Origin: Octopus sinensis
Lineage: Eukaryota
Assembly: GCF_006345805.1 (NCBI RefSeq)
Contig: NC_042997.1
Span: forward strand, 155,868,001 to 155,932,000
DNA length: 64,000 nucleotides
Reading direction: 5' to 3'
The notes under the pieces: generated by a model
The model's input: the letters and a program-made list of their open reading frames with translations, nothing else
What the model was told of the DNA's origin: nothing
Databases searched by the model: none
Shown here: one piece after another, positions 1 through 60,275 of the stretch
Layout: each line of letters opens with the position of its first letter
How positions within the stretch are numbered: the stretch's first letter is position 1
Translations under genes and position numbers: made by a program

Positions 1-610
1 GGATGTATAAAGTAATACGCATTTTTGTTGAATATTGATGATGTAATTTTTTTATTTAAAATAAGTTTCCTGTGTTTCAATAGCTACCATAGCATAATCA
101 TTTGTTTGGTCAATACTATTTATTTTTCTTTCCTGGAAACTTTTTTCTTGAATAGTTTTCTCATTTTCTGACCATTGTTCAAGCAGCAACTTTCTTCTGT
201 TAAATATGAAACTTGTGCAAGAGTAGTTTAGGGTTCTGCATATATAATTAAATAGTGAATTCATCATTTGCTACAATTACCTCTTCCCCATCTCTAAACA
301 TCTCACTCTCTCTCATATAACAGCCCCCTTGATCCTCTTTGTACCACTTATATTCACCACCCCCATACACTGTACCTTGTGGGTATGTCATGAAACATCT
401 CCATCATCAATAACCCTGTCTGTCTCTCTATCTTACTTTCTAACTATCTCTGTTTCCTCTCCTTTTTTTTACCTACTGGAACAGCCAAATATCTCCTCTA
501 CAGTAAGACACCCATCTCTATACCCCCATTATACTTTAACTCCTCAACCGGCACTCTGGAACAAAGTCACCTCCCTCAGCACCACTCTCGTTCCCAGCTG
601 AGGGACCCCA

Positions 611-789
611 CTGGTGCTGGTGCCACATAAAAAACAGCCAGTATACTCTGTAAAGTGGTTGGTGTTAGGAAGAGCATTCTGCCAAAGCACACCATGTAGG
701 CTGGTGTAGTTGTATGGCTTGCCAGCTCCTATCAAATCATCCAACCCATGCCAGCATAGAAAACAGATGTTAGATGGTGATGATGATGA
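611..789 (+). mobile_element. RTE LINE 3' UTR fragment with (TGA)n tail
   Basis: aaagtggttggtgttaggaagagcatt...aacccatgccagcatagaaaacagatgttagatggtgatgatgatg; same module follows the RTE ORF end at 14100-14418. Confidence 0.8.
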
Positions 790-876
790 GTGAATAAACT
801 AAGAATTATATGGATATAGGGCAACAGAAACTCAGAAACCCTGTGCTAAGAGGCAGTTAAAAACTTTGATAACTGT

Positions 877-1745: not shown

Positions 1746-2115
1746 TTTTACTTGTTTCAGTCATCAGATAGTGGCCATGCTGGGGCACCGACGTAAAGAA
1801 TCATTAGCCAAATGAATTTACCCCAGTTCCTAATTTTGTTAAGCCTGGTACTTATTCTATCGGCCTCTTTTGCTGACCCACTAAGTTACAGTGACGCAAG
1901 TGCACCGACACTAGTTGCCAAGCGACAGCTGGGGACAAATATACACACACACACAACAGGCTTCTCTCAGTTTGTCAACCAAATTCACTCACAAAGCTTT
2001 GGTTGGTCCAAGGCTATAGTAGAAGACACTTGCCCAAGGTGCTGTGCAGTGGGACTGAACCTGGAACCATGTGGTTGGGAAGCAAGCTCCTTACAGCACA
2101 GCCATGCTTGCACCT
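1746..2115 (-). mobile_element. Full-length tRNA-derived SINE (tail type A)
   Basis: On the minus strand: A-box-like tggctgtgctgt, B-box-like ggttcagtccc, CORE-like ccttgggcaagtgtc, internal (TG)n, then tail gtccccagc...tgactgaaacaagtaaaa; many similar copies in the window. Confidence 0.85.
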
Positions 2116-2444
2116 CTAAAACATGTCAACAGCCAGTATGTTACAAAATTTTAAAGTTTCTCTAAGTTATTATATTCTGAGATATCAGCTCACTTTAGTT
2201 TGCTAAATTTTGACCTGTCTAAATGTTTCTGACATTTCCCTTTATATTGTTTTAGTCACATTTTCCACACATGACCAACAACTCACTTAAATGTAATGTG
2301 ACAGTTTTTGTGATCAACTTTCACACCACAACACTGTTTTTGAATTTCAGATGCTTCTTATTTATATCCCAATTAAAATATTAATATAATACACACATAT
2401 ACAAATAATGGTTATGTTTGTAACTGAAATTCTGCCAATACATA

Positions 2445-3239: not shown

Positions 3240-3385
3240 AGTATATGTTTGTGTGTCTGTTTGTCCCCACCACAGTCACTTGGCAACTGATGCTGGTGTG
3301 TTTATGTCCCTGTAACTAAGCGTTCAGCAAAGTGACTGGTAGAATAAGTACTAGGCTTTTAAAACAAATGTCCTGGGTTCAATTT
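3240..3385 (+). mobile_element. SINE tail A fragment
   Basis: gtttgtccccaccac...tagaataagtactaggc matches the tail at 2760-2880. Confidence 0.75.
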
Positions 3386-3720
3386 CATCATCATAATCAT
3401 CCTTTAACGTCCATTTTCCATGGTGGCATGGGTTGGACAGTTTGACTGAGGTCTGGAAAGCCAGCAACTGCACCAAGCTCCAATCTGATCTGGCAAGGTT
3501 TCTACAGCTGGATGCCCTTCCTAATGCCAACCACTTCGAGTGTGTAGTGGGTGCTTTTTATGTGCCACCAGCACAGGAGCCAGTCAGGCGGCCCTGGTAT
3601 CAATTACGTTTGGATAATGGTTTTTACATGCCACTGGCATGAGAGCCAGTCAGGGGGCATTGGCATCAACCACGTTCAGATGGTGCTTTTTATGCACCAC
3701 TGGCATGGGTGCCTGTCAAG
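3386..3720 (-). mobile_element. RTE 3' UTR fragment with internal tandem units
   Basis: catcatcataatcatcctttaacgtccattttccatgg...ggatgcccttcctaatgccaaccacttcgag is the reverse complement of the RTE tail. Confidence 0.8.
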
Positions 3721-4075
3721 GGCAATTTGTTCAACTAAAACCCTTCAAGATGATGCCCCATCATGGCTGCAGTCAAATGACTGAAATGAATAAAAGATAA
3801 GAGATAAGGTAATGTCACAAGAGCGATCAAGTTTTTTAAAACTTCAACATTCAGATTACTGTCAATTGTAATGCTTGTTTAATTACACTGTTTTAGTACC
3901 TCCTCTGTAGCAAGATAATTCTCTCTCTCTCTCTCCCAACTTTCTTGTCCTACTGGTGTAGCCAAGTGTCTCCTCTGAATTAAGACAGCTATCCCTGACC
4001 TTCTATCATACTCCAACATCTTGCCAGGCAGACAGCCATTTGGCGACTCAGTGGGTACTGGTGACACTTAAAAAG

Positions 4076-4293
4076 CACCCTTGCCAGTGCCACATAAAAC
4101 GGTACCTGTGCTGGTGCCACATAAATAACACCCATGCTGGCACCATGTAAAAGCACTCATTACACTCTGTAAAGTGGTTGGTGTTAGAAAGGGCACTCAG
4201 CCATAGAAACCATGCCAAAATACAAGACTGCTAGCTCTAGTCAAACAGTCTAACCTGTACATGTATGGAGAACAGATGTTAAATGATGATGAT
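4076..4293 (+). mobile_element. RTE 3' UTR fragment
   Basis: ~21-bp gtgccacataaaa units, then aaagtggttggtgttagaaagggc...gttaaatgatgatgat. Confidence 0.8.
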
Positions 4294-4329
4294 TTAAATT
4301 TATCTACATTATCTAGTATCTAAGATTTT

Positions 4330-4885: not shown

Positions 4886-4965
4886 CAAACTGGGGAAAAC
4901 ATGGTTTTGTTTATGTATTACTGATATTTGTTATATCATGTTGGCTATACACATTAGATATATAG

Positions 4966-6606
4966 ATTTAAGATAAGCATCTGTATGGTGGGACGGATAA
5001 AAAAAAAGTAAGGTTGCTCCACATATATATATAATTTGTTTGTTTCTGAGATATTGCTATTGCTGTAATGTTATTTTGAGAGTTATATGATAAGTGTATC
5101 TAAGGGGAAAAAATAAAGGAAATAATCTTGGTTTATTGCTGATCAGTGCGAACAGTGACACTTTAAATCTAGTTGAATACAAGAGGGTATAGCACATTGA
5201 ACACACAATTTGACCTAATGATGCCAACTAACTTCAGTATGAAGGTAACCAAAGCATGAATGAAGATTTTATAAGATAGCAAATTATTCGATGTGACAAA
5301 TGCTTTCAAGGTAAAAAAAAAATTGCAACAGTATCATCATCATCATCATCATCATTTAAGATCTGCTTTCCATGCTGTTAGGCATTAGATGGTTTGACAG
5401 GATCTGGCAAACCACAGGGTTGTGTCACCTTTAATGTTAGCTTGGCATGGTTTCTATGGCTGAATGCCCTTCTTAATGCTAACCACTTTACAATGTGTAC
5501 TGGGTGCTTATTTTGTGTCACTGGCACTAGTGTGATTGCAAAATAACTTGCAAGACAAGAACAGTATGAGTCTTTTCAATATTTTTTGCACCTCTATATT
5601 ACTTTCTACTAAACTTGATGTCAAGATCTGGCATTTTGTTAAAGCTGGAAAATGTTCGAATCCATTTCAAATCACCATTGAATTTCAATATCTGATCTCA
5701 TAACCACCACCTCTATCTTCTTTCTAGCTACTCCCACCCTTATATAATGTAGGGTGGCCATGTGTCTTCTCTTTAGCAAGACACTTGGGCTTGTCTCTTT
5801 ATCATACTTTAGCTTCCCAATACCTGGCATAAAAACCACTGCCTTCATACCCTAAACACATACACATTTGAGAGACCTTTTTCCCGTTCTTGCCTTGCAA
5901 GTTATTTTGCAATCATACTAGTGCCAGTGACACAAAAAAGGCACCCAGTACATATTGTAAAGTGGTTAGCATTAGGAAGGGCATTCAGCCATAGAAACCA
6001 TGTCAAGCTAACATTAAAGGTGACACAACCCTGTGGTTTGCCAGATCTTGTCAAACCATCTAATGCCTGACAACATGGAAAGCAGATCTTAAATGATGAT
6101 GATGATGATGATACAGTTGCAATTTTTTTTACCTTGAAAGCATTTGTCACATCTAATAATTGCTATCTTATAAAATCCTCGTTCATGTTTTGGTTACCTC
6201 CATACTGGAGTTAGTTGGCATCATTAGGTCAAATTGTGTGTTCAATGTGCTATATCCTCTTGTATTCAACTAGATTTAAAGTGTCACTGTTCACACTGAT
6301 CAGCAATAAACCAAGATTATTTCCTTTATTTTTTCCCCTTAGATACACTTATCATATAACTCTCAAAATAACATTACAGCAATAGCAATATCTCAGAAAC
6401 AGACAAATTATATATATGTGAAGCAACCTTATTTTTTTTTTTTCATCAATTCCAACATACAGATGCTTATCTTAAATTAGATATTGAAATTCAGTGGTGA
6501 TTTGAAATGGATACAAACATTTTCCAACTTTAACAAAATGCAAGATCTTGACATCAGGTTTAGTAGAAAGTAATATAGAGATGCAAAGAATATTGAAAAG
6601 ACTCAT
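4966..6606. repeat. Complex inverted duplication: A(4966-5562), rc-B(5566-5693), rc-S(5694-5885), rc-A(5886-6477), B(6479-6606)
   Basis: Read by eye: 4966-5562 is the reverse complement of 5886-6477, and 5566-5693 of 6479-6606, with scattered substitutions and small indels. Confidence 0.95.
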
Positions 6607-6700
6607 CGAAGAGTAGCATGGTTTCTGTTTCGATTCACTGCACTTAAAATGGGAACCTGTCAGTCTTTTGATTCTTGTAAGACATAAGTTATCTAACAAA
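6479..6700 (+). mobile_element. Degenerate non-LTR RT C-terminal fragment (CR1/L2-like)
   Basis: Translates to KWIQTFSNF...DAKNIEKTHRRVAWFL with stops, resembling the CR1 DIxxLExVQRR motif; the upstream part lies inverted at 5566-5885. Confidence 0.4.
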
Positions 6701-7859
6701 TCAGTCTAACCACCAACTCCCCACCCTCAGCGAAAAAAAAAAAAGAAAGGAAAAGTCTTTTGTAATTATCTTTATAGGCATCATATTGAAAAATCAAACT
6801 TCAAGAAAATGTCAGTGAGTGAAATTGTTCCACAATGATATATTTCCTTAATACTGTAAAAAAAAAAAAATCATTGAAAAGAAAAAATTTATTGATTATG
6901 ATTTTCTTAAAAAAACAAAAAGAAAGTTAGAGGCGGAGTGTCAGTGACCTTTGCAGACCCTCCCAGACTAGTGAGATTGATGTGGTTGATCTTTAGTTTA
7001 AAGATCTGTAGGCAGACATCAACTACAAAATAATAATAAATAATAAGAAAGGAAACCGTTGGCAGATATAGTTCTAGGAAGGAAAATGAAGTGTTTAATG
7101 TGAGATCCAATCACAATAAGGATTATTTTTAATGGGTTAGTCAGAAGATAAAGGTATTTTAAAAGGTTTCTAAGTATGGTAGTTGTAGTGAGGGGAAGGC
7201 AGAAGAAAGAACAACATGCAAATTATCCTGAAACTAGAGATTTGGTTTAAATGCTTGCAACTGGGTGAATTCTGCTAAAGTACTCAAAGGTATGATAGTT
7301 AAACTGGGCAATAAAGTCAACCACAGTTACAGCTTCACTCACAGAGCTTGGGTTGACTCAAGGCTACAGTAGAAGACACTTGTCTATGGTACCATGTCAT
7401 GGAACCAAGCTATGTACATGCGGTTGCAAAGAAAACCTCTTTACCACACAGACACAAGGAAGAGAGAGAGAGTGTATTGGCTCAGTTAAGATGCAGCTAG
7501 CTACCTGAGAAGCTGTTGTGATAGTTCTTGTAGCATGTTGGAAAGAAATAGCACATACATTAATGTAGTAAACGAAAAATATTTCTGCATCCTCAAGTAT
7601 ATTAAAAATATTTTAAACTAATGTGGTTGTGGAATGAATCCTCAGAATATATGCTGTGTTCTTGTGAAAATAGCAATTAGCTAAGCAGCATTTATTATGG
7701 ATTAAAAAAATTAACAGAACAGTGGAGTTGAGTGGAACCTAATATCAGTTAACAAAACAAGAAACTGCTTCGATACACATCATTTTGTCAAAAACATGGC
7801 ATAAAATATACCCAGATGTCACTCCACAGCAATACTACATTTTGAGCTAATGAGCCTTG

Positions 7860-14099: not shown

Positions 14100-14418
14100 A
14101 CCGTTCGAGTGTTGGACCTCATGGAGGCAGTAGCAGGTGACTAAGACCTTTGGTAATATACCGTGCTTGTGGAGACCTATCAAGCCAAGTGAGACCATAG
14201 TCGTGGTCAATGCTGGTGTCATATCAATAGCACCTGTGTCAGTGGCATGTAAAAAAACACCCAGTACACTCTTGGAGTGGTTGGCGTTAGGAAGGGTATC
14301 CAGCCTTAGAAACCATGCCAAATCAGATTGGAACCTGGTGCAGTCCCCTACTTACCAGTTTTCAGTTAAACTGCCCAACCCATGCCAGCATGGAAAGTGG
14401 ATGCTAAATGATGATGAT
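14100..14418 (+). mobile_element. RTE LINE 3' end (ORF end plus full 3' UTR)
   Basis: 5' part ttggacctcatggaggcagtagcaggtgactaagacctttgg matches the end of the RTE ORF at 39357-39405 and continues into the tail ending atgatgatgat. Confidence 0.85.
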
Positions 14419-14419
14419 A

Positions 14420-14580
14420 TTTCAAGATGGTATGCTGGCAGAATCAGCAGAGAGTCAGAAAATATGCTTTGTGGTGTTTCTATCAGCTCTTTACACACTA
14501 GGTTCAAATTCTGCCAAGATCACCATGCTAATGATTCTGCCAGCTTGCCAATAATAATAGTAATAATAATAATAGTAATA

Positions 14581-14830: not shown

Positions 14831-16184
14831 TTATTATTGCTACTATTATTATAAGCAGTATTGTGTTACTAAGACATTAAGTTCACGAGCAAAATTATCT
14901 CTAAAACTTTCTGAAAATCTTCAATTAACTTCAGTCAGGCCTCACATAAATATAAGGTTTTCTTTCATTACAGAATATGAAGAAACTACTTGAAGGAGAA
15001 GAGTGGGCGAGTGATTGTGTGTGTGTGGTGGAGGAGAACAGTCAGCCATCTCAACTAACCATTAATACAAAACTGATTAATACAGTTCTGATGAATAAAA
15101 TCAAATCAAAAGCTATCTAAAGCAATCAATAAATTGCAGTATAAAATAAACTGAAGAATTAACTTTGAGATCTTTTGTTTATATTTCATTTATTGGTGTC
15201 TCAATATGGAAGACTAGAATTGGTGGAGATGACAGGTAAAGGAGATTATTCTGTCAGGTTTATAAACTAACAGACTGAAAATAAACCATTTTTAATGGTA
15301 GTATATTTCAGAAAATAAATTTAATGTGAACATTAAGTTCTCAACCTGCACTTTGGGAAAGAAACACAAGTTAGGAACATAAAAATAGCTGATTAGATAA
15401 CTAAAAAAATCAGCTTATCACTAAGAAACTATATTATAGTTCTTTTAAAGCAATCAACAGTTTAAAAAAGAAAAAAATGAAATAAAAATGAAGTAAATGG
15501 AAGGTGTGGTTAACAGGAAGAGCATATTGGAAGCTAAAGGCGCCAGTGGCAAGATTAGATTCTATACAACAAATGGGAAAGTTTACACAAACTGGTCAGA
15601 GGATCAATGGCATTTGATAAGATTAAGGAAAGAAAAACCTTAAGAAATAACCTCTAGATGCCTGAAAGCTGATCAGTGTTTGGAACAAAAGGTATTCCTA
15701 AACTCAACTTCGTGTAGTGGTGAGGTGTTGTCAGAGAATGTAGTAACAGAATGCACCAAGTATAGAAAAAAAGAAAAGGGCAAAAAAGAAAAGGGCAAAA
15801 AAGGTTAGAAATTCAGAGATAAGCAGACAATGCAATCAGTGAGTATATACAATTCAGTTAAGTTTTTTTTAAACAGAACAGCTAGGCACTTAAACTCCTA
15901 GAATGGTAAACACATTGCTTCAGTAACAGTTTTCATTCAAAGACCACAGTCTGCAACAAATGACTCCCTAGAACTAATACAAATGATTGCTAACTTGAGT
16001 AAACTGAACACTAATGTCCAATGACAATATGATCACAGGTGAGTGAAAGTTCAGCGAATTCTTTATACTTAGGAGTGCATTACAGTTTGATTTATTAAAT
16101 ATAATGTGAAATGAAGATAAAAGTAAGGTTTAGAATGTTATCAACAGTTAACTTCAAAAGAGAAAAACAGAACAATCAACTTGA

Positions 16185-16460
<276 letters not shown>

Positions 16461-17603
16461 GGATAAAGTGATTTGAAGAGACAAACTTAGAGTGAAATAA
16501 ATAAAACCTAAGAAAAGTACTGAACAAAAAAAGATGAGAAACACCTAAAAGATGTGGGAGTTATATTCATGAAAATGGATCCAATATGTCCTTGCAGAGA
16601 AACTAATGATGGCCAACAAGGTTTTCACTGACAACTGCTTTTTTCTTCAATTGGAAAACATTCGTGTTTATCAACATTCAAATTAATATTAGGTGTAGTG
16701 TGTGTTACCGATAGCAGAAACTGCAAATTAGCCAAAGCAGAATGCATGATTGTAATTTTAAATTAGAATCACAGATCATTACTTGCAGTATTTTTCCTTC
16801 ATTTTAATTGGAAATTGTAGCAACAACACTGACAACAACAACAACAGGTGACATTTTCTGTGATTGTGTCCCATAAAATGGAAAAAAAAAAGAAAAGAAA
16901 AAAAGTAATAATAGAAAGCCTGCTTAATAAATAGTATGCAAGTTAGACTTGAACAGATGTCAGATAAAGTAATTAGTTGTTTGATAAATAGCTACTGTAG
17001 TAGGAATACAACACTCCCTAGCATTAGAGCTGGAAGTTCCAATAAGATAAACAATAAGGTTACAATGTTGGATAGGTTGGCAAATATTCCTCTTTTATTC
17101 ATTATTGATAAATGAAGCACACACACATACAATGGGGGAAAACTGAATTTGTACATGGTGGTAGCAGCAACAGTAGTAAGTAGTATTATGAAGATGAAAT
17201 GGAGGGGGGGGGGAGCCTGTGCTCAGAATATTAAGTCAGACTAGAAAATAAAGATAACCAGGAAGAGTTAATGTTAGAGATACGTAGTTGGACAGAAAGG
17301 AAGTTGCAGCAAAGTAATGAGAGGAAGGACAAATAGTGTTTAATGTGAGCTCCATGGAAGAAAACAGCTGGATGACTGTAAGAAGAGAGGCAGGTACAGC
17401 GAAGGGATTTAAATGGAAGTAGTAACAATCAGTAAATTTAGAGGAGCAGACCCCTGTGAAGAAAGAGGAAGAGAGAAAGGATAAGAAGGATAGCTCAATG
17501 GATGGTGGGTTGCTGTGTCTTGTTGGAAGTAATTTTGCTAATCAAGTGAATAATTTTCTTGGGATGCAGCCTAGAATATTTGGGGGGGGGGGAGAGAGTG
17601 AGT

Positions 17604-25892: not shown

Positions 25893-26745
25893 CCACAGAC
25901 ATGGACCACTTTTCTACACCAAATTTGAAACAATTATTTCATGAGTAAAACTTAACCTTACTAACACATTATTTTGCTGTTTTTACATCCATCACCCCGT
26001 TTTGGCTACCCCCACCTAGAAAAAAAGTTACAGAAGTATTGATATCAATTCAGAACCAACAAGAACAGGGAGAAGTGAAAGTTCTCTTAGGGAAACATAT
26101 GATGTGGAAGAATGGAATAAACAGGGGTCCAACTAGAGAGAAGCAGAAAAAACAGCCCAGAGTTGAGAACAATGGAGAACAGTCATTGATATGACAGTGA
26201 AGGGCTTAAGCAGTATTAAGTAGTTTAGCCCAAGGTCAGCTCTGACTGAGTGGACCTATGATTAAAGGCACTCTAGTTATGGTTATGCTGTCTTTTTGTA
26301 TTTCTATGACTATAGTGCTTGTCAATTTTATAACTCAAGACAGTGGGGGTCTAATCTGAAAACCTAGTTATTACTTCTAGGAAGCTGGTTGACCATACAT
26401 ATATAGGAGTCTATATTGGCTTGTATTGTGTTGAGTGTTTGCATGTTGTTATGGCTTGAATCAATAAATAATTGTGCAGTTTTCCATGAAGACTCAACCT
26501 TGAAACAAATCTAAAATATATTTTTACAACATTACATGGCATAAATCAGTGCCTAAACATTTTGGGGCCGCTGTTTCCTTGGCACCCAGGCCACTTTCCT
26601 ACTGTTACTCCTCCTTTCACCACCACAAACATGGACCACTTTTCTGCACCAAATTTGAAACAATTATTTCATGAGTAAAACTTAACCTTACTAACACATT
26701 ATTTTGCTGTTTTTACATCCATCACCCCGTTTAGACTACCCCCAC
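25893..26745. repeat. 123-bp direct repeats (25893-26015, 26623-26745) flanking 607 bp
   Basis: 4 mismatches counted, no indels, constant 730-bp offset. Confidence 0.97.
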
Positions 26746-28319: not shown

Positions 28320-28590
28320 AAAAGCACTCATGGTAGTGCCATGTAAAAGCGCTTGTGTGGTTCCACATAAAAGTGCCTGTGTGGTGCTATGTAAAATTGC
28401 CTGTGCAGTGCCATGTAAAAGCACCCAGGACACTCTGTAAAGTGGTTAGTGTTAGGAAGGGCATCCAGCTGTAGAAATCATGCCAAACCAAAGTCTGGTG
28501 TAGCCCCCACTCCCACTTGCCAGCTCTGGTCAAACCGTCCAACCCATGCCAGCATGGACAACAGATGTGAAATGATGATGATGAAGCATG
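28320..28590 (+). mobile_element. RTE 3' UTR fragment with about five ~21-bp tandem units
   Basis: Repeated gtgccatgtaaaagc-like units, then aaagtggttagtgttaggaagggcatccagctg...atgatgatgatg. Confidence 0.85.
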
Positions 28591-30834
28591 ATGAAAAGTC
28601 AAAGGCTGCGCAGAAATACAACATAGTAAAACTCATAGAATTCTGTAATGTTTTTTTTTTTAAAGTAATAATATTCAGAATGGTATTTTTTTGTTTATGA
28701 TCAGATCAGTAATCTGAACAAAATCCACCTTGTCTGGATAATTGCAGTTTAACATGTAGAAGCATCACAATAAAATGTATCCAAAACACACTGCAAAGTA
28801 CTTGGATGGTGATGAATAAAACAACACAGTATAGAAAGGATTTCTTAGTTTTGCTAGGACAAGAAACCTATCTTGCATTGGTGCAATGATAACATGCACC
28901 CAGTAATTCTGTGTAGTGGGTGACAATGAATAAAGATAATGCAGAGAAGAGCAGGCTCTTTGGCCTTGCTGCAAACAAGACAGCTTTTCTTGTGCAGGAA
29001 ATGGTAAAGTTTAGTCTCATACATTTGGGCCACACAGACAAAATGAAAAGATTGAGGAATGGCAATATACCATGCCAAACACTCTTCCAACACCAGAATG
29101 GGAAAATAGTTTTTCAAATGATGATGATATGAATAAGATTGAAAACATTAAGCTGAAGTTGAAGTTCTTTCAAGACTTAAGTGGGGAAAAATGACTTCAA
29201 AATAACATTTTCGATTTACAATTTGTATTTTTAGTTATCATCACATTTAGTTCATTGCAGTTTAACAAACTACACAACCTATGAGAGTTCATTTATTTCC
29301 TAATATAGCAAGAAAATTCCAGCGTCTTTGTATGATGCTATTTTCCCTCTGTAACTTAATATAGTAAAATAACTACAGGTGTTTGCTCTTTCAAACAAGA
29401 TATAACTTCATGTGTAACCCACATGGTGTAAAATACTGAATCAATTTTTCCAGCATATGATTAGCATTCCTCCACATTGTTGTAGACTTTTACCTTTGGC
29501 CATACAGAGACACTAGCTTGAAAGGTTTTAGTCAAACAAATTGACTCCAGTACTTGTAAGTGTTATTCTATCAGTCTCTTCTGCTGAAGTGCTAAGTCAT
29601 GAGGACACAAACAAACCAACACTAGTTGTCAAAAGGTGGTCGGGACAAACATAGAGACACACTTGATTTAATTTCCTCTTCATAAAAATTCAATTTAAAA
29701 GAGAAGTCTATGATTTGTACTTATTTTAACATGCTATCTTGAAAGTGACAGTCTTTTTATTACATGACTTAGTCAGAAGAAGAAGGGCAGCAATCTTGAC
29801 AGTTTTTCTCTCATCCTCTGAAACTTGTGGGAAGAAGGGAGAAATTTATTCTCAGACCAGAGTCTTAGCCTGAACATTTGCAACAGAGTGAACTACTACT
29901 AAAAACACCTAAGAGACAGGATATGGTATAAATCGTTATGAGAAATTAAGTCTACCACCCCAAAACAGGAACAACCATTTCAAAGTCTACCAAACTTCAT
30001 CTACAATACTTTGATCATACTCAGGTTATGATAGAAAACACTTGTCCAGTATGACATGCAGTAAGACTGAACCTGGAAGCATGTAATTGCCAAGTGGGCA
30101 TCATAGCCATTGCAGTTACACATGTGGCCTTAGTTTGAAAGCTAATTTCCATTCAAACAGGAATAAAAAAAAAAAAAAACATTTACTCTAATAAATAAAA
30201 AAAAAAACAAGCAAACAAAACCTGGAATCTGAAACAGTTCAGCTCCAAAAAAACCAGAATTCATCTCTCGCAATGATGCACACATATTTTATAAACTACA
30301 CAGTAATTAAATTAAAAACTAATCAAATGATAAAGTTCAACAAAAACAGATTAAATTTGAGCAAATGGCTCAATGGCAGAACATGACAATCTGTTTAGCA
30401 ACTTAAATTCTTCATTTTATTATAATAAGTTCAGTCATTCCTCCTCCTAAATTTAAATAAAATAAGCTCTTAATTCATACTGACAAATCTGATTAGAGAT
30501 TGAGTTCTAATCTGAAAGAGAATGAACCAATATAACAATTGAGTCTAAAATTAATGATTTAGTAATTAATTCTCTCATTTGTAGCAATGTATTAAAATAT
30601 TTTTACACTTTACTCAATAAGTTTGAATATTCTTTATGGTTTAGTTTCCAAAGAATACCAAAAATCATAAATGCTCAAACAGAGGATTCTATTCAGATAA
30701 ATTGGAGATATTCTACAGAAATGAAGCCAAACAATCCCTTATCAGAAAGCAGCAACTGCAAAGAAGTCTTCAGAATAAAACATGATTTAAAAAATAAATA
30801 ACTGACAAATCATATTATCTTCAGGGTGATGGAT

Positions 30835-35904: not shown

Positions 35905-36845
<941 letters not shown>

Positions 36846-38780
36846 ATAGATCATCATCATTGTTTTAAATCCACTTTTCCATGCTTACATACATAAAAAT
36901 ATGCATGTATGTATGTATATATAATCATTTTAGTATTTACTTTTTGATGCTTGCATACCTTTAAATATGTATACATCTATATTTATCTATGTATCTATTC
37001 ATCCTTGTTTCAACATTCACTTTTCCATGCATGTATGTATGAATTCATATACATTATATACTAATATGAAAGGCATGATGCTATGGTTTTTGTCAGAGAG
37101 AAAACCTCTTCATAGACATGCTGTGTTAAAAACAATATAGAGTGGAACTTTGGTTTATGAACAATTTTTTGAACATAATACATCTCGAGTGATGAACAAT
37201 GTCTTGAGTAACAAACATGTAAGCCAGTAAGAGTTGGTGACAAGCAGGGACTATCAGCAGGAGAGTGTCAATTATTGTTTAGCTTTCATTTAGTGCACAT
37301 CCCCACTTGAATTTGCTGTGCCTCCTCTTCAATTTCCCATGAGAAAAATAGTTTCAGCTTATGTGTATTTAGCGTGATGAACAGCCTTCAGGAACTGAGG
37401 TTTGTCTTGCAGTGAGCCATGAGAACACCCAATGTGTCTTGGTCTTTTTGGGACTTGAATAAAACTGTATTATTATTACTATATAATATATTATTCAGGG
37501 ACAGGTTTCATTTAGGCATGTGAGTATCAGGTAGATATCATTGGCAAGCTCTAAGGAGACCAAAAATTGCATCTGATATTCTTGTGGGATGGTATTCATT
37601 TCACTCTGATATATATTTTGCCATTATAAAACAGCATGTATATGGAAAGATTTTCTCTCAGACAAAAACTGCAGCATCATGCTTTTCAGTGTTGTATATT
37701 CATTCAATATGACATAGAACTAGCTATTTTAATATTGATTCAGTTGTAAATACTAAGTTTTATATATATATATATATATAAATAAATAAGATTTTCAATA
37801 AGCAACCATAGTAAACAGCACAAAAGAATGTCCTCAAAAAAACTCACTGTTACAAATGGAATTGGTATATTCAATTATTCTTTCCTTAAAATATGGATAG
37901 ACATTTATACCACAGCCATCATTTTGTTTAGGTCAAAATTTTCTGCAAGACCTACATATTATGTAGAAAGTAAAGAGTGCCTGGTTTGAGACCAGGTTGG
38001 ACCAATATTAATTATTAAAGCTGTGAAATTAAAATTCTGCAGAAGCTGTGGCCTTAAGCAACTTGATTATTATTTCACATATCTCAATCAAGCTAGCTGA
38101 AAAGATATCACAACTCTTTCTTCACAAAGTAATAGTTGGTATTAGAAAGGTAACTCAGCTGTAAAATTACTTGCTTCAACAATTCATAAGCTTCACAAAC
38201 ATTTGTTCAATCTATTACAGGAAATAGATGTCAGTATGTACGTATGATACCACATATTTATGCTTGCGCACACAAATTTTCAAAAGCATATTCAGATGTG
38301 TGTGTGTGCATGTGTAAGGCACATACACCGGCTGGCCCATCTAGCCAGTGGGATGGCATCGTTTGAAAGCTAAAACAGCACAAGGCGCATTGTGAACAGC
38401 AGTGTGTAACAACATCTGATAGCCTGGTCAATATGGTGACACACACACACACACACACAAACAATACTGATGTTTCAAGTTCAAGTAATTCAAATTTCAT
38501 TATTATCTGCATCTTTTCACACATTCAGCCTAAGGTGAAAAGGTGAGACCCGGATTAGGCTGTCAATTTTTGATATAATAAACAATCCACCTTATATAAT
38601 GTATTGAGTTCTATATCAGATGGTGTTTGCACTCATTTTCATCATCCTCATCCTCACATCCACTTTCTGCTTACATGGGTAAGACAGAATTCATTGAGGT
38701 ACATTTTCTATTACCTCAATGCCCCTCCAGTTGCCAATTCTCACTTCTTTCCAAGCAAGGTATTTTTATATATATGTATA

Positions 38781-38842
<62 letters not shown>

Positions 38843-38844
38843 AC

Positions 38845-39408
38845 TTCTGTCATATTCCAGGGAGAAAAACTACAAGTAGTTGACAGCTTCTGTTACCTAG
38901 GTGACCAAGTCAGTAGTGGGGGTGGATGCTCTGAAAGTGCAGCTGCTAGAATAAGAGTAACCTACCTCTGCTGGTGACCAAGGGACTCTTACTCAGAGTA
39001 AACGGTAGACTGTATGATGCGTGTGTACGAACAGCCATGCTACGTGGCAGTGAAACATGGGCGATGGCAGCTGAGCACATGCATAAGCTTGCAAGGAATG
39101 AAGCTAGTATGCTCTGCTGGATGTGTAATGTCAGTGTGCATACAAGACAGAGTGTAAGTGCCCTGAGAGAAAAGTTGGACCTAAGAAGCATCAGTTGTGA
39201 TGTGCAAGAGAGATTACTGTGCTGGTATGGACATGTGGTGCGAATGGATGAGGACAGCTGCATGAAAAAGTGTCACACCCTAGCAGTTGAGGGAATCTGT
39301 GGAAGAGGTAGACTCAGTAAGCGCTGGGATGAGGTAGTGAAGCACAACCTTCAAACATTGGGCCTCACCGAGGCAATGACTAGTGACTGAGACCTTTGGA
39401 AATACGCT
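38845..39408 (+). mobile_element. RTE-clade LINE RT C-terminal fragment
   Basis: GEKLQVVDSFCYLGDQVSSGGGCSESAAARIR, then GRLYDACVRTAMLRGSETW...WYGHVVRMDE...GRGR..KRWDEVV; small deletion or frameshift after ARIR. Confidence 0.93.
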
Positions 39409-49915: not shown

Positions 49916-51042
49916 ATACACACATACACACACACACACACACTAATAAGTAAAGAGTTCTAGAACTTTATCGTGTTTAGAATGCTAAAGCAAAAGAAAC
50001 AAGCTGACACTAAGACTATAAAAATGATGATGAGGTGTTTCTATAGGATAGACACTAACAAGCCTCTTTCACTTCTTCTCCTCTTAATAATACAGCTGAC
50101 AGTTTGTACAAACCTGGTGCAGCAGAGCAACAGAGAGGATGAGGAAGGCATAAGCTGCTGTTTTGTAAACTGACTAGGTTTATTCAACAGCAGGAAAATA
50201 GGATCGATACAGATATCATCAGCCAGTCTAGTATTTATCTAGCTACACCAGGTTTCCAGCTGAATGGAACAAAAGTCTGTTACTGCTGTAGACAGGAATC
50301 GACCAGACATGCAATAAACAGTAGGATCCAAGTAAAGCTAGAAGAAATGAAGAAAGCAGAATGCTAGAGAACCGATAACAGATGGCTCTAATGAAACTCC
50401 TCAAATTCTTCTTTGGTTTGAAATATTAACAAGAAAATGAAAACTAAAAATGAATTTGGTAATCAGGAAACTTGTGAAAAGAACGGTCTATTTTTCCAAT
50501 TTTTTTTTTTCTTTTTCCATGTATATATTAAGCCTCATACTACAGTAAATAATGAAATTTTGAGCTCAAATATTTAGGAAATAAGATATTAGATCTATGG
50601 TTTAAAAAAAAAAAATGAAGAACAGAAATCATTTTGAAGTAAAATTTATAACATTGTCTGAGTTTCTCTAAAAGGTTTCATGTATTCATATACAGAAGAA
50701 TATTTTAAAAGCACATTTTATTTAATAAAAATCCCCCCACCTCCCTTTCAAAAAGTAAAACCTTAAAAATTCTTAATTCTATTTTTTCACTTCTTTCTTT
50801 CTTTAATTTTAAAAATAATGAAGAAAAGATTCTGTTAATAACATTAAGGTATGTAAAAATAATAAACACCGAACCAACTTTATTTTATATTTACTTAGAT
50901 ATTAATGCCTATGAGCAAATCTTCAAATATCTTTTGCCATCCTAATAATGTTATTATGCTCAGTAATCAACTTTATTTCATAATAATAGCTGCCTGAAGC
51001 AAGATAAATTCCTTGGTTTAGACATAATTTTTAGTTTCACAC

Positions 51043-51526
51043 ATACATATATATATATATATATACATACACATACATATATGTATACACACACACATAT
51101 ATATACATACACATACATATATATATACATACACATACATATATGTATACACACACACATATATACACACACACACACATATATATATACACACACACAC
51201 ACATATATATATACATACACATATACATACACATACACATATATATATACATACACATACATATATATACATACACATACATATATATACATACACATAC
51301 ATATATATACATACACATACATATATGTATACACACACACATATATACATACACATATATATATACATACACATACATATATGTATACACACACATATAT
51401 ACATACACATACATATATGTATACACACACACATATATACATACACATACATATATGTATACACACACACATATATACATACACATACATATATATATAT
51501 ATACACACACACATATATACATACAC

Positions 51527-51561
<35 letters not shown>

Positions 51562-51625
51562 TACACACACACACACATACACACATATATATATATATGC
51601 AAATATATATAAACACACACATACA
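51043..51625. repeat. ~580-bp compound TA/CA satellite with higher-order units
   Basis: Recurrent tacatacacatacatatatgtatacacacacacata-like units; source of ORFs 50978-51668. Confidence 0.97.
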
Positions 51626-53146
51626 CACACTCTTTGCAAAATTAAAGTCTCAATATGAAACAAACTAATAATTAATTGTATTATTGTTTTAATTAAAATT
51701 TACTGAAAGGACTTTTTATGACTATTATTTATTTGTTCAAAAACCACATTTAGCAGAATTATATAATAAGAAGGAAGGTGCAGTGAAAACAAAAGTAAAC
51801 AGAGGAGGAGGAGGAGTAGCAAAATCAATACTCTAACATAGTAATATGATTATCTTTAGAAGAGATTAGAGAATTTTTCAAAAACAAAAAAAAAAAAAAA
51901 TAAAAAATAAAAATGTAAAATGAATGAACAAAATATCTTTCTTAAAACAATTATTAATTCCACAGCCAATTAGCTTTCAGTGAAATATTGATCATGTACT
52001 AGGACTAGTTAGGCAACAAACCACAATTTGATTCTGTCTAACAAAGATAAACAATAACCAAGCGGAGAAGTTTTGAACTAAAAATTTCACTTGAGCAAGC
52101 AAATAGCTATCTTTTAGTGCTTTGTTCATTTAAGATATATATATATTGTTGCTTACACATGCAAAACACATTAGAGAAGAATGTAAGAAATTCCAATTTC
52201 CCTAAATAATCACACCATAAAAAGTATTTGGAGGGAGAGGAATTATTTTAGAAGGAATTATGAACAAGTAAAAAAATAAATTAAAAAAAAAGAAAGAAAG
52301 AAAAGAAAACCTATACCTGTCACTCACAAGTAAACATGACCTAGTAATATGTACCACATTTATGTTGATTGTTTTTATGGCACCAATGAAGCTATGGAGC
52401 AGATATGTACACATGGACACCCTTGCAGTTCTCCCACCCATGACCCTGCGGAACATACAGATGGGACAACTGGAGGGAGAGATGGTCGCATCAACACTCA
52501 GCTGGTACTCATTTCAGCTGAGTAGGCGAAAACACAGGGAAATGATGTTTTTTACTCTAAACATAACACGCTTCCTGGTCCAAGAATTGAACCCATGACG
52601 TTATGATTATGAAACCGACACCCTAACCTCATAGCTACACATCTTCACATTAGGAAGAGATAAGCAGTTAAAGTAGAAACACTTAGAACTATTACTAATC
52701 AACTTCTGTCATTTTATTTTTATTAATTTGTTTACACATTAGTATTAATACTCTATTACTGTGGTGGTACCTTCACAGGTCTTAGTTGTTGATAATGACC
52801 CCAGTACATATTTCAGCCAGATACTAGCAATCTCTATTGAATTATATTACATTTATTTTTATCTACTAGGACTCAAAGACGGGAAGGGTGTCAATGACTT
52901 TTGCAGGCTAAGACTGGTGAGATTGAAGCTTTTAATGTTCCACTTAAACTACTGGAACCCAACACACTGTTCCACAGCAACACACACGTGACAATCTTCT
53001 GCACAGTTTCTACTCATCAAAATTGATCCACAAAGTAATGGTCAACTTGAGACTAGAGTAGAGAACATGACAAACAGCAGAATCAAACAGGGAAACACAT
53101 GTAGTTTATATGTGAGAGATTTATTTTTCAGTTAAAATATAAAGAA

Positions 53147-58576: not shown

Positions 58577-59838
58577 CGTCCCATAAATAATGTGATTTTT
58601 TTTAATTGCATGAACTAAAAGTCGGAAGGGGACGGGATAAACTACCTGCATCAACTTACTATAAAAGCAAGTACTAATTTTACCTTGTTTTTATTCTTAG
58701 TGCAAGTTTTGAAGAGTGCAGTTCAATTCTAACAGTTAACTTTTCAAAGCTGTAATGGAAGTGACAAAGGAGCATATTTGGCATATTTTGCTTTATGAGT
58801 TCAATAAAGGCAACAAGGCAATGGAAAGTGTGAGGAATATTAATGCAATATATGGGGATCAGACAATAAGCATAAGCCAGTGTTGACAGTAGTTCCAGAA
58901 ATTCCGGGCTGGAATCTACAGCCCAGAAAATGAGCTTTGTCCTGGAAGATTTGTAGAGCTCGACGAGGACATCCTGCAAACCCAGCTGGAATAAAATTCC
59001 ATTGTAACTGTTGAGGAATTAGCAGAGAACCTTCGATTTGGTCGGTCAACCATTCATTGACATCTGCATGCCATTGGAAAAGTTAGCAAATAGGATTAAT
59101 TGGTTCCTCACAAACTTTCTGAGTCTAATAGCATGCAGAGAGTGAATGTGAGCTCCTCTTTGCTGCCACATCTTACGAATGAACCTTTTTTGGACTGAAT
59201 AGTGACTAGTGACAAGAAATGGGTTCTCTATAAAAATGTCAAGTGCTGAAGACAGTGGATAGAGAAAGGAGAAACACCAACACTCTAAGCTAAAGAAGGT
59301 CTTCAACCACATAAGGTGCTGTTATCTGTTTGGTGGGATATGTAAGGTTTAGTCCACTTTAAACTTTTAGACCCAAACTAAATGATAAAGATCTACTGCG
59401 AGCAGCATAAGTCTGCACTAAAAGAAAAACGACCATCTTGGGTTTCAAAACAAAAGGTATTCTTCCATCAGTATAATACTCAGCCACATACAGCGAGAAT
59501 GTCATTTCAAAGGCTGGAGCAGTTTGAATGGGAAACAATGCTCCACCCACCATTTTCTCGGACATTGCCCCATCTGATTATCATTAATTCTGCAGTCTTC
59601 AAAATCATTTGGACAGAAAAAATATGAATTCTGTAGACAAGATCAGAACAGTACTGGAAGAGTAGTTTTCATCATAGACAAGTGAATTTTGGGAGAGAGG
59701 ACTTGCAAGTCTACCAAATAGATGGAAGAGCATTGTAGAAAATGCAGGAGAATATATTTTAGATGAAAAAAGTACTTTATCTTAATTCTGAAAAATAAAA
59801 GAAGTATAAAAAAACTGCATTATTTATGGGAAGACTCA

Positions 59839-59879
<41 letters not shown>

Positions 59880-60035
59880 ACTGGCTTTTTTCAGTTTCAT
59901 CAACCAGATCTACTCACAAAAGTTTGGCTGGCTCAGAGCTATAGTAGAAGACACTTGCCCAAGGTGTTATGCCGTGGGAATGAACCCAGGAGCATGTGGT
60001 TGGTAAGCAAATTTCTTACCATACAGTCACAGCTG

Positions 60036-60036
<1 letters not shown>
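58272..60036 (-). mobile_element. SINE (tail B) split by a mariner insertion
   Basis: Tail 58272-58480, microsatellite on both sides of the mariner, head 59878-60036. Confidence 0.7.
58571..59839 (+). mobile_element. Full-length defective mariner (DD34D), 1269 bp
   Basis: TIRs tagggtcgtcccataaataatgtg / tgcattatttatgggaagactcaa with TA flanks. Transposase from ATG 58755: MEVTKEHIWHILLYEFNKG..., VPHKL, VTSDKKWV, FHQYNTQPH, HPPFS.DIAPSDYH; multiple stops and frameshifts. Confidence 0.95.
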
Positions 60037-60069
<33 letters not shown>

Positions 60070-60072
<3 letters not shown>

Positions 60073-60275
60073 ATGTGTCTCCTTGTTCTGACATGGAAAT
60101 GAATGTCATTTTCAATATTCTGCAAAAGCATGATTGGTCATGGGGAAATATTACTTTGTTTGGAAACATAAGTGCTGTCAGAATAAGGGCATCTGACCAT
60201 AGAAAATCTGCTCAATAACTATGGTCTGACCCATCAAACTTGGAATAGTGGACATAATGATGATGATGATGATAC
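60070..60275 (+). mobile_element. SINE tail B with (TGA)n
   Basis: Similar to 36590-36845; ends tgatgatgatgat. Confidence 0.7.

What the first reader, a model, noticed from the sequence alone, without database searches (positions are those of the whole stretch)
4966..6606. Duplication-inversion-duplication with a reconstructable ancestral allele
The order is A, rcB, rcS, rcA, B, C, which is not a simple palindrome. It is exactly what results if the ancestor was A-S-B-C and a reverse-complement copy of A-S-B replaced S: A (~595 bp) and B (128 bp) are duplicated in inverted orientation and S (192 bp) is inverted. The A-S, S-B and B-C joins read continuously (S-B-C looks like one LINE remnant). 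Only two junctions are new: 5563-5565 (agt, apparently untemplated) and ~6477-6478 (1-2 nt overlap). This fits a double template switch or staggered-break inversion. The arms have diverged, so the event is old, and the RTE tail inside A predates it.
Basis: partly seen in the sequence, partly recalled or inferred. Interest (0 to 1): 0.75.

Follow-up and report, generated by a model that had tools for sequence, protein, structure and literature searches.

The report
Small inversion flanked by inverted duplications
A 1.6-kb non-coding stretch of an octopus-like genome carries the scar of one old copying or repair accident that flipped about 190 bases and duplicated the sequence on both sides in reverse; this kind of mutation is well known and shows no sign of function here.

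Summary
The order is A (4966-5562), a 3-nt filler agt, rcB (5566-5696), rcS (5697-5885), rcA (5886-6477), B (6476-6606). The A arms are 95.6% identical and the B arms 93.1%. They are the only inverted repeats of at least 80 nt and 88% identity in the 64-kb window.

New internal support comes from a roughly 400-nt SINE-like retroposon with an (ATG)n tail. It is intact in the central copy (5711-6112), crossing the A|S join, and is cut off at 5562 in the outer A copy, so junction 1 is derived.

S is the 5' half of the same element as the "RTE tail" in A. It is not part of an S-B-C LINE remnant, for which I found no evidence.

Arm divergence is transition-biased, falls on both arms, and is the same in A and B (p=0.26). 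That fits one old event, roughly 6-10 My, and argues against mis-assembly. No orthologous allele could be reached. The class is already known (dupINVdup, staggered-break inversion, template switch type 3-1-4-2), so interest is low to moderate.

The parts
4966..5562 (+). A, outer copy (597 nt). 4966-5332 is single-copy flank. 5333-5562 is the 3' 230 nt of a SINE-like retroposon in minus orientation, cut off at 5562.
   Evidence: 95.6% identity to 5886-6477, reversed; retroposon homology
5563..5565 (.). Junction 1 filler 'agt', matching neither the continuation of A (S) nor the continuation of B (C).
   Evidence: alignment; sequence
5566..5696 (-). rcB, the inverted copy of B (131 nt).
   Evidence: 93.1% identity, 9 mismatches, no gaps
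5697..5885 (-). rcS, the single-copy middle segment, inferred to be inverted (189 nt). 5711-5885 is the 5' half of the SINE-like element; 5697-5710 is 14 nt of non-repeat flank.
   Evidence: colinear alignment to copies at 426-789 and 3919-4293; S-only homology reached by 2/1000 and 0/1000 shuffles
5886..6477 (-). rcA, the central inverted copy of A (592 nt).
6476..6606 (+). B, outer copy (131 nt). Its first 2 nt overlap the end of rcA; this is junction 2, with 2 nt of microhomology, possibly 3.
   Evidence: sequence
5711..6112 (+). Intact SINE-like retroposon of about 400 nt with an (ATG)n tail at 6093-6112. It spans the rcS|rcA boundary at 5885/5886.
6607..6750 (+). C, the right flank, taken as ancestrally contiguous with B. 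It is single-copy in the window and has an A-rich tract at 6731-6744.
   Evidence: no other copy; contiguity is inferred by parsimony only

Best explanation
This is the fixed scar of one complex structural mutation in non-coding, repeat-rich DNA of an octopod genome. The ancestral order was L-A-S-B-C. A carried the tail half and S the head half of one SINE-like retroposon of about 400 nt lying in minus orientation. In a single event the 917-nt block A-S-B was copied in reverse complement and joined between a retained A and a retained B. The result is L-A-(agt)-rcB-rcS-rcA-B-C, 724 nt longer than the ancestor, with two new junctions. I lean (about 55:45) towards a double template switch within one replication fork. 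In that model synthesis leaves the template at the end of A, resumes on the opposite strand at the end of B, copies back to the start of A, and returns to the start of B through 2-3 nt of microhomology. The other route gives the same product: two pairs of staggered breaks, fill-in, and end-joining of the middle piece in reverse. Shown here: the segment order, both junctions, that junction 1 cuts a retroposon that is intact in the other copy, and that the arms diverged afterwards on both sides. Inferred: the ancestral state of L|A, S|B and B|C, that it was a single event, and the molecular route. I see no evidence of any function, so it is most likely neutral.
For: The window has no other long high-identity inverted repeat. 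When the reconstructed L-A-S-B-C is searched against the rest of the window, hits to other copies of the retroposon family run unbroken across the A|S join (positions 740-1137 of the reconstruction; join at 963/964). Three long copies (5711-6108, 426-789, 3919-4293) start at the same point and are colinear. Homology of S alone is significant. A-arm and B-arm divergence are statistically the same (4.4% vs 6.9%, Fisher p=0.26), with 28 transitions to 7 transversions and 6 differences at CpG sites. Using the retroposon family as an outgroup, about 6 changes are derived in the central copy and 3 in the outer copy, so both arms drifted after the duplication. [quoted passage not shown]
Against: No outgroup allele and no reads were available, so ancestral contiguity of L|A, S|B and B|C rests on parsimony (two new junctions against three or more). 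The junction signatures are a 3-nt filler and 2-3 nt of microhomology. These fit both replicative and end-joining routes and may have mutated since the event. The 917-nt reverse-copied block is much longer than the short events catalogued as type 3-1-4-2, and the 189-nt inverted core is far smaller than Drosophila or human examples. The B arms are nominally more diverged than the A arms.
Confidence: 0.72

Rival explanations
1. Two or more successive events. One example is a first template switch giving A-rcS-rcA-B (one inverted repeat with an inverted spacer), followed by a separate inverted insertion of B. Another is a first event giving A-S-B-rcA-B-C, followed by recombination between the A arms that flipped the spacer.
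For: B-arm divergence (6.9%) is nominally higher than A-arm divergence (4.4%). 597-nt inverted arms can in principle recombine and flip the spacer without leaving a new junction (inference).
Against: The divergence difference is not significant (p=0.26). The first variant needs a second breakpoint to fall exactly on the first junction. The second needs a switch order in which point 4 precedes point 1; PMC5453318 never observed such orders, and it also needs an extra recombination step.
Confidence: 0.12
2. The composite is, or is part of, a multi-copy mobile element. Examples are a foldback or long-terminal-inverted-repeat transposon with A/rcA as its arms, or a twin-primed retrocopy (rcB-rcS-rcA + B-C-polyA).
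For: There are long inverted arms. An A-rich tract lies at 6731-6744, downstream of C. 'TAGATAT' occurs near both outer ends, at 4955-4961 and 6478-6484.
Against: A-unique, B and C have no second copy in 64 kb. The 7-mer is offset by 4 nt on the left, so it is not a flush target-site duplication. A foldback element would not carry in its loop a copy of the sequence next to its insertion site. Twin priming explains rcB-rcS-rcA-B-C but not the adjacent outer A. Breakpoints are not at element ends: junction 1 lies inside a SINE. No transposase or reverse transcriptase signal was found.
Confidence: 0.06
3. Assembly artefact: a chimeric or fold-back long read, or a false join.
For: Inverted duplications are a known artefact of long-read libraries (general knowledge), and no reads were available to check.
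Against: Artefactual fold-backs give near-identical, simple palindromes (X then rcX). Here the arms differ by 4-7%, the differences are transition- and CpG-biased, and derived changes occur on both arms relative to an outgroup. The arrangement is interleaved rather than palindromic. There are no gaps or N.
Confidence: 0.04

Closest known systems
dupINVdup complex structural variant of human genomes (Brand 2015; Collins 2017 PMC5338099; gnomAD-SV preprint 10.1101/578674; case P4 in PMC6286558)
   Same: The allele structure is identical: the reference runs up to the end of the first duplicated block, then, optionally after a filler, the whole interval is read in reverse from the end of the second block back to the start of the first, then the reference resumes from the start of the second block. 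There are two new junctions with microhomology or small insertions, and the class is attributed mainly to FoSTeS/MMBIR.
   Different: Scale and setting differ. Here the blocks are 597 + 189 + 131 nt, against hundreds of kb in the cited case. This one is fixed and old in an octopod rather than a polymorphic or de novo human variant. Its ancestral allele has not been observed.
Inversions flanked by inverted duplications from staggered breaks (Drosophila melanogaster group; Ranz et al. 2007, PMC1885836)
   Same: The inverted segment is bounded by inverted duplicates of ancestrally single-copy sequence from both breakpoints. The duplication sizes here (597 and 131 nt) fall inside their 46 bp-1.9 kb range. 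As in their work, the duplications allow the polarity of the change to be inferred.
   Different: Their inverted segments are chromosomal in scale, whereas this one is 189 nt, shorter than one of its own flanking duplications. No sister-species comparison is available here.
Short-range template-switch mutation, four-point model type '3-1-4-2' (Loytynoja & Goldman 2017, PMC5453318)
   Same: In ancestral coordinates the switch points fall in the order 3 (start of A), 1 (end of A), 4 (start of B), 2 (end of B). [quoted passage not shown]
   Different: Their catalogue targets mutation clusters with copied fragments from about 10-14 bp upward and treats long-range events as out of scope. Here the copied fragment is 917 nt. 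They found the type to be rare (1% of events).
DUP-TRP/INV-DUP and ODIRA inverted amplifications (PMC11293582, PMC10766183)
   Same: Both are replication-based template switches between strands that produce inverted copies (abstracts).
   Different: Those use pre-existing inverted repeats as switch substrates and yield triplicated segments or hairpin-capped intermediates. Here nothing is triplicated, and no pre-existing inverted repeat is seen at the switch points.

Membership tests
dupINVdup / inversion with inverted duplications at both breakpoints | Two blocks are each present twice in opposite orientation, interleaved as A ... rcA and rcB ... B in the order A, rcB, middle, rcA, B. | tested here: met
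   A 4966-5562 / rcA 5886-6477; rcB 5566-5696 / B 6476-6606
dupINVdup / inversion with inverted duplications at both breakpoints | The first predicted new junction (end of A joined to the reversed end of B) is derived, not ancestral. | tested here: met
   The SINE-like element is intact across rcS|rcA (5711-6112) but cut at 5562 in the outer copy.
dupINVdup / inversion with inverted duplications at both breakpoints | The second predicted new junction (reversed start of A joined to the start of B) is derived, while L|A, S|B and B|C are ancestral. | tested here: inconclusive
   No repeat or other marker crosses these joins. The retroposon head stops 14 nt short of S|B, and the upstream homology tests are at chance level. 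Support is by parsimony only.
dupINVdup / inversion with inverted duplications at both breakpoints | A colinear single-copy A-S-B-C allele exists in an outgroup or in the population. | not testable with these tools
   There was no hit for the locus in the protein-indexed assemblies or in metagenome, prokaryote or viral contigs. No cephalopod genome collection is available.
Four-point template-switch mutation, type 3-1-4-2 | The reverse-complement fragment 2->3 overlaps both point 1 and point 4, giving the order 3-1-4-2. | tested here: met
   The ancestral-coordinate reconstruction matches the definition in PMC5453318.
Four-point template-switch mutation, type 3-1-4-2 | The event is short-range, on the scale of a mutation cluster (copied fragment of tens of bases). 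| tested here: not met
   The copied fragment is 917 nt (131 + 189 + 597). The same topology applies, but this lies outside the size regime the catalogue was built for.
Replicative (FoSTeS/MMBIR) origin specifically | Microhomology at the junctions, templated insertions, and excess point mutations next to the breakpoints. | tested here: inconclusive
   Junction 2 has 2-3 nt of microhomology. Junction 1 has a 3-nt filler with no convincing template. The mismatch cluster at 4988-5019 next to junction 2 is not significant (scan p about 0.1).
SINE (for the embedded element) | A short non-autonomous retroposon: many copies, a common 5' end, a 3' simple-repeat tail, no coding capacity, and a pol III (tRNA, 5S or 7SL) head. 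| tested here: inconclusive
Seven further matches (six or seven copies) in 64 kb, an (ATG)n tail, a common 5' start in the three long copies, and no ORF or Pfam hit. No tRNA-like head was detected.

The most novel reading that the evidence does not exclude
Kilobase-scale double template switches may be a recurrent way in which cephalopod genomes create long, near-perfect inverted repeats. If this one is transcribed, its A arms would form a roughly 577-bp RNA duplex. Such a duplex could be a substrate for the heavy A-to-I editing or small-RNA pathways of octopuses, and while the arms were young their recombination could have made the 323-nt spacer a flip-flop inversion. Nothing here shows transcription, editing, polymorphism or recurrence.
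Probability: 0.06. Interest if true: 0.6.

Novelty: new member of a known kind. Interest (0 to 1): 0.28.

Why it matters
This is a clean, fully resolved example of a complex mutation class at an unusual scale. It sits between the tens-of-bases template-switch clusters and the kilobase-to-megabase dupINVdup variants and inversion breakpoints described in humans and flies. That supports the idea that one mechanism works across scales and across phyla. It also shows a practical point: a retroposon split by a junction can act as an internal outgroup, so the direction of a rearrangement can be inferred from a single genome. For octopus biology the locus itself is probably neutral. It would become interesting only if long inverted repeats of this origin prove to be common or transcribed.

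Tried and rejected
1. Reaching an orthologous or alternative allele failed. Exact look-ups of the two longest local ORFs and a homology search with the B-C ORF found nothing. So did DNA pattern scans of metagenome, prokaryote-genome and viral contigs with stretches conserved between the arms. I ran no further search on the A-unique ORF. The reverse-transcriptase query returned only 6 hits, none from read-archive assemblies, so octopus genomic ORFs are evidently not indexed.

2. The 'S-B-C is one LINE remnant' claim found no support. There is no second copy of B or C in the window by BLAST or nhmmer. There is no Pfam domain in the local ORFs or in a six-frame translation of S-B-C plus 800 nt downstream. 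There is no homology upstream of the retroposon head into B.

3. Break-proximal hypermutation was not found. The cluster at 4988-5019 is not significant.

4. I looked for a template for the 'agt' filler. 'CAGTATGA' also occurs at 5235-5242, but an 8-mer match in any of several frames within 2 kb is expected by chance about one time in three (my estimate), so I dropped it.

5. Structured-RNA explanations gave nothing. Rfam at gathering score gave no match, and the permissive search gave only a chance-level bacterial sRNA match at E=0.41. No tRNA was found.

6. A literature search for the retroposon core sequence returned nothing. Brand 2015 is not held in the library.

7. Foldback transposon, twin priming and mis-assembly were each considered and judged unlikely, as set out under the rival explanations.

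Full report
**What is there.**

- A is 4966-5562 (597 nt). It pairs in reverse with 5886-6477 (592 nt): 26 mismatches in 589 aligned columns (95.6% identity) and five short indels, all in homopolymer or microsatellite runs.
- rcB is 5566-5696. It pairs in reverse with B at 6476-6606: 131 nt, 9 mismatches, no gaps, 93.1% identity.
- Between rcB and rcA lies a single-copy segment, rcS, at 5697-5885 (189 nt).
- The order is therefore A, agt, rcB, rcS, rcA, B, then the flank C. This is an interleaved arrangement, not a palindrome.
- In a self-comparison of all 64 kb, only three pairs reach at least 88% identity over at least 80 nt: these two inverted pairs and one unrelated direct pair near 26 kb. 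The pattern is far beyond chance.

**The junctions.**

- Junction 1: A ends at 5562. The three bases agt (5563-5565) match neither the continuation of A seen in the other copy nor the continuation of B into C. rcB then starts at 5566.
- Junction 2: the last two bases of rcA and the first two of B are the same 'AT' (6476-6477).
- The next base, T at 6478, is C in both possible sources, namely the complement of 4965 and the complement of 5694. The microhomology was therefore 2 nt, or 3 nt (ATC) if a later C>T change occurred there. That last step is inference.

**The main new result: a retroposon crosses the A|S join.** I rebuilt the proposed ancestor L-A-S-B-C and searched it with nhmmer against the rest of the window.

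- Multiple and pairwise alignments show an element of about 400 nt with an (ATG)n tail. In the central copy it runs from 5711 to 6112 on the plus strand.
- The three long copies begin at the same point and are colinear throughout.
- The homology of S alone to the 5' halves of the other two copies is reached by only 2 of 1000 and 0 of 1000 dinucleotide shuffles.
- So S is the 5' half of the same element whose 3' half sits in A. The element is whole in the central copy and cut off at 5562 in the outer copy. This shows, without an outgroup, that junction 1 is a derived breakpoint.

The same result contradicts the claim that S-B-C is one LINE remnant.

- B and C have no second copy in the window.
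- No Pfam domain appears in the local ORFs or in six-frame translations of S-B-C and 800 nt beyond.
- No homology extends from the retroposon head into B.
- I could not name the element or its LINE partner. No tRNA-like head was found, and no octopus repeat library was available.

**Is it one event, and is it real?**

- A-arm and B-arm divergence do not differ significantly (4.4% vs 6.9%, Fisher p=0.26).
- The differences are 28 transitions to 7 transversions, and six sit at CpG sites. That is the signature of evolutionary decay, not sequencing error.
- Within the retroposon part, using the other family members as an outgroup, about six changes are derived in the central copy and three in the outer copy. 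Both arms have drifted since the duplication.
- Together with the interleaved, non-palindromic layout and the absence of gaps, this makes a chimeric-read artefact unlikely.
- The retroposon copies differ from one another by 25-40%, far more than the arms do. Both A copies carry the element at the same place with the same 367-nt flank, so its insertion clearly predates the rearrangement.

**Dating (rough).**

- The window is octopod. A reverse-transcriptase-like ORF at 38974-39390 finds Octopus vulgaris and O. bimaculoides proteins.
- One octopus repeat study equates a Jukes-Cantor distance of 0.09 with 25 My (PMC13282606).
- With that calibration, the pooled arm-to-arm distance of 0.050 gives about 7 My, with a range of 6-10 My.
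- This is a minimum if the arms have undergone gene conversion.
- It is younger than the 13-33 My split quoted there for O. vulgaris and O. bimaculoides. A congener may therefore still carry A-S-B-C, which is a testable prediction.

**Parsimony.**

- Each homology boundary must be ancestral in one copy and new in the other.
- Junction 1 is now shown to be new.
- Any history that keeps rcA|B ancestral needs at least three new junctions, because [A, rcB] is not the reverse complement of [rcA, B].
- Two-step histories are possible. They need either coincident breakpoints or a switch order that was never observed in the human catalogue, plus an extra recombination step.

**Mechanism.** The product is what a double inter-strand template switch gives: synthesis leaves at the end of A, resumes at the end of B on the other strand, copies back to the start of A, and returns to the start of B. 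[quoted passage not shown]

- It is equally what two pairs of staggered breaks with fill-in and reversed rejoining give (PMC1885836). There, duplications of 46 bp to 1.9 kb flank 59% of the inversions studied.
- It has the same breakpoint grammar as the human dupINVdup class, including a filler at the first junction in a published case (PMC6286558; PMC5338099; 10.1101/578674).
- The junction signatures do not separate the two routes.
- A cluster of differences next to junction 2 is not significant.
- I lean slightly towards the replicative route. Everything lies within 1 kb, and the staggered-break route would need a 597-nt overhang to be unwound; Ranz and colleagues themselves note that difficulty.

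**Consequences.** If transcribed as one RNA, the A arms would form a duplex of about 577 bp (minimum free energy -1038 kcal/mol). The rcB:B stem cannot form at the same time, because the two pairings cross. I found no evidence of transcription, coding capacity or a known structured RNA. The most likely status is a neutral, fixed scar.

**What could not be done.** No cephalopod genome or read collection is reachable. Exact ORF look-ups, one protein homology search and DNA pattern scans of metagenome, prokaryote and viral contigs all returned nothing for this locus.

**Verdict.** The core interpretation is the best available and is now supported at one junction by internal evidence. One of its supporting arguments is wrong. 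The class of event is well known, so interest is low to moderate.

Noticed in passing
window 25893-26015 and 26623-26745: The only other long high-identity repeat pair in the window: two direct copies of 123 nt, 97% identical, 730 nt apart. It could be a small element with terminal direct repeats or a local duplication.
   Followed up: partly
window 427-790, 3363-3579, 3929-4294, 14191-14432, 28406-28594, 36103-36144, 36228-36406: Seven further matches (six or seven copies; the two near 36.1-36.4 kb may be one broken copy) of the same (ATG)n-tailed SINE-like family. They share a 3' core of about 200 nt. Only the copies at 427-790 and 3929-4294 share the 5' half with the copy in the finding, which suggests several subfamilies with one common tail.
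   Followed up: partly
window 4070-4149: A 27-nt unit is repeated three times in tandem (67-74% identity) inside the retroposon copy at 3929-4294, in the same variable middle region where junction 1 falls in the copy under study.
   Followed up: no
window 58740-59624 (+): Remnant of a mariner/Mos1-type DNA transposon. The ORF at 58740-58883 matches the Mos1 transposase HTH domain (PF17906, E=2e-13). An ORF at 59382-59624 looks by eye like the C-terminal catalytic region, but it had no Pfam hit.
   Followed up: partly
window 38627-39390 (+): Two adjacent ORFs resembling the C-terminal part of a LINE reverse-transcriptase protein. The second has 45-79% identity to hypothetical proteins of Octopus vulgaris and O. 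bimaculoides. This is the only evidence here for the organism. It had no Pfam hit.
   Followed up: partly
window 50978-51668 and 16141-16527: Very long compound dinucleotide microsatellites, about 690 nt of TA/CA/TG-type and about 390 nt of (GA)n-type. They create spurious long ORFs in several frames.
   Followed up: no
window 1812-2165, 2362-2781, 59826-60218 and others: Another high-copy repeat family. It is recognisable because its copies translate to a recurring peptide (...IYQIHSQGFG...AIVEDTCPRC...) and are often next to dinucleotide repeats. It is unrelated to the finding.
   Followed up: no
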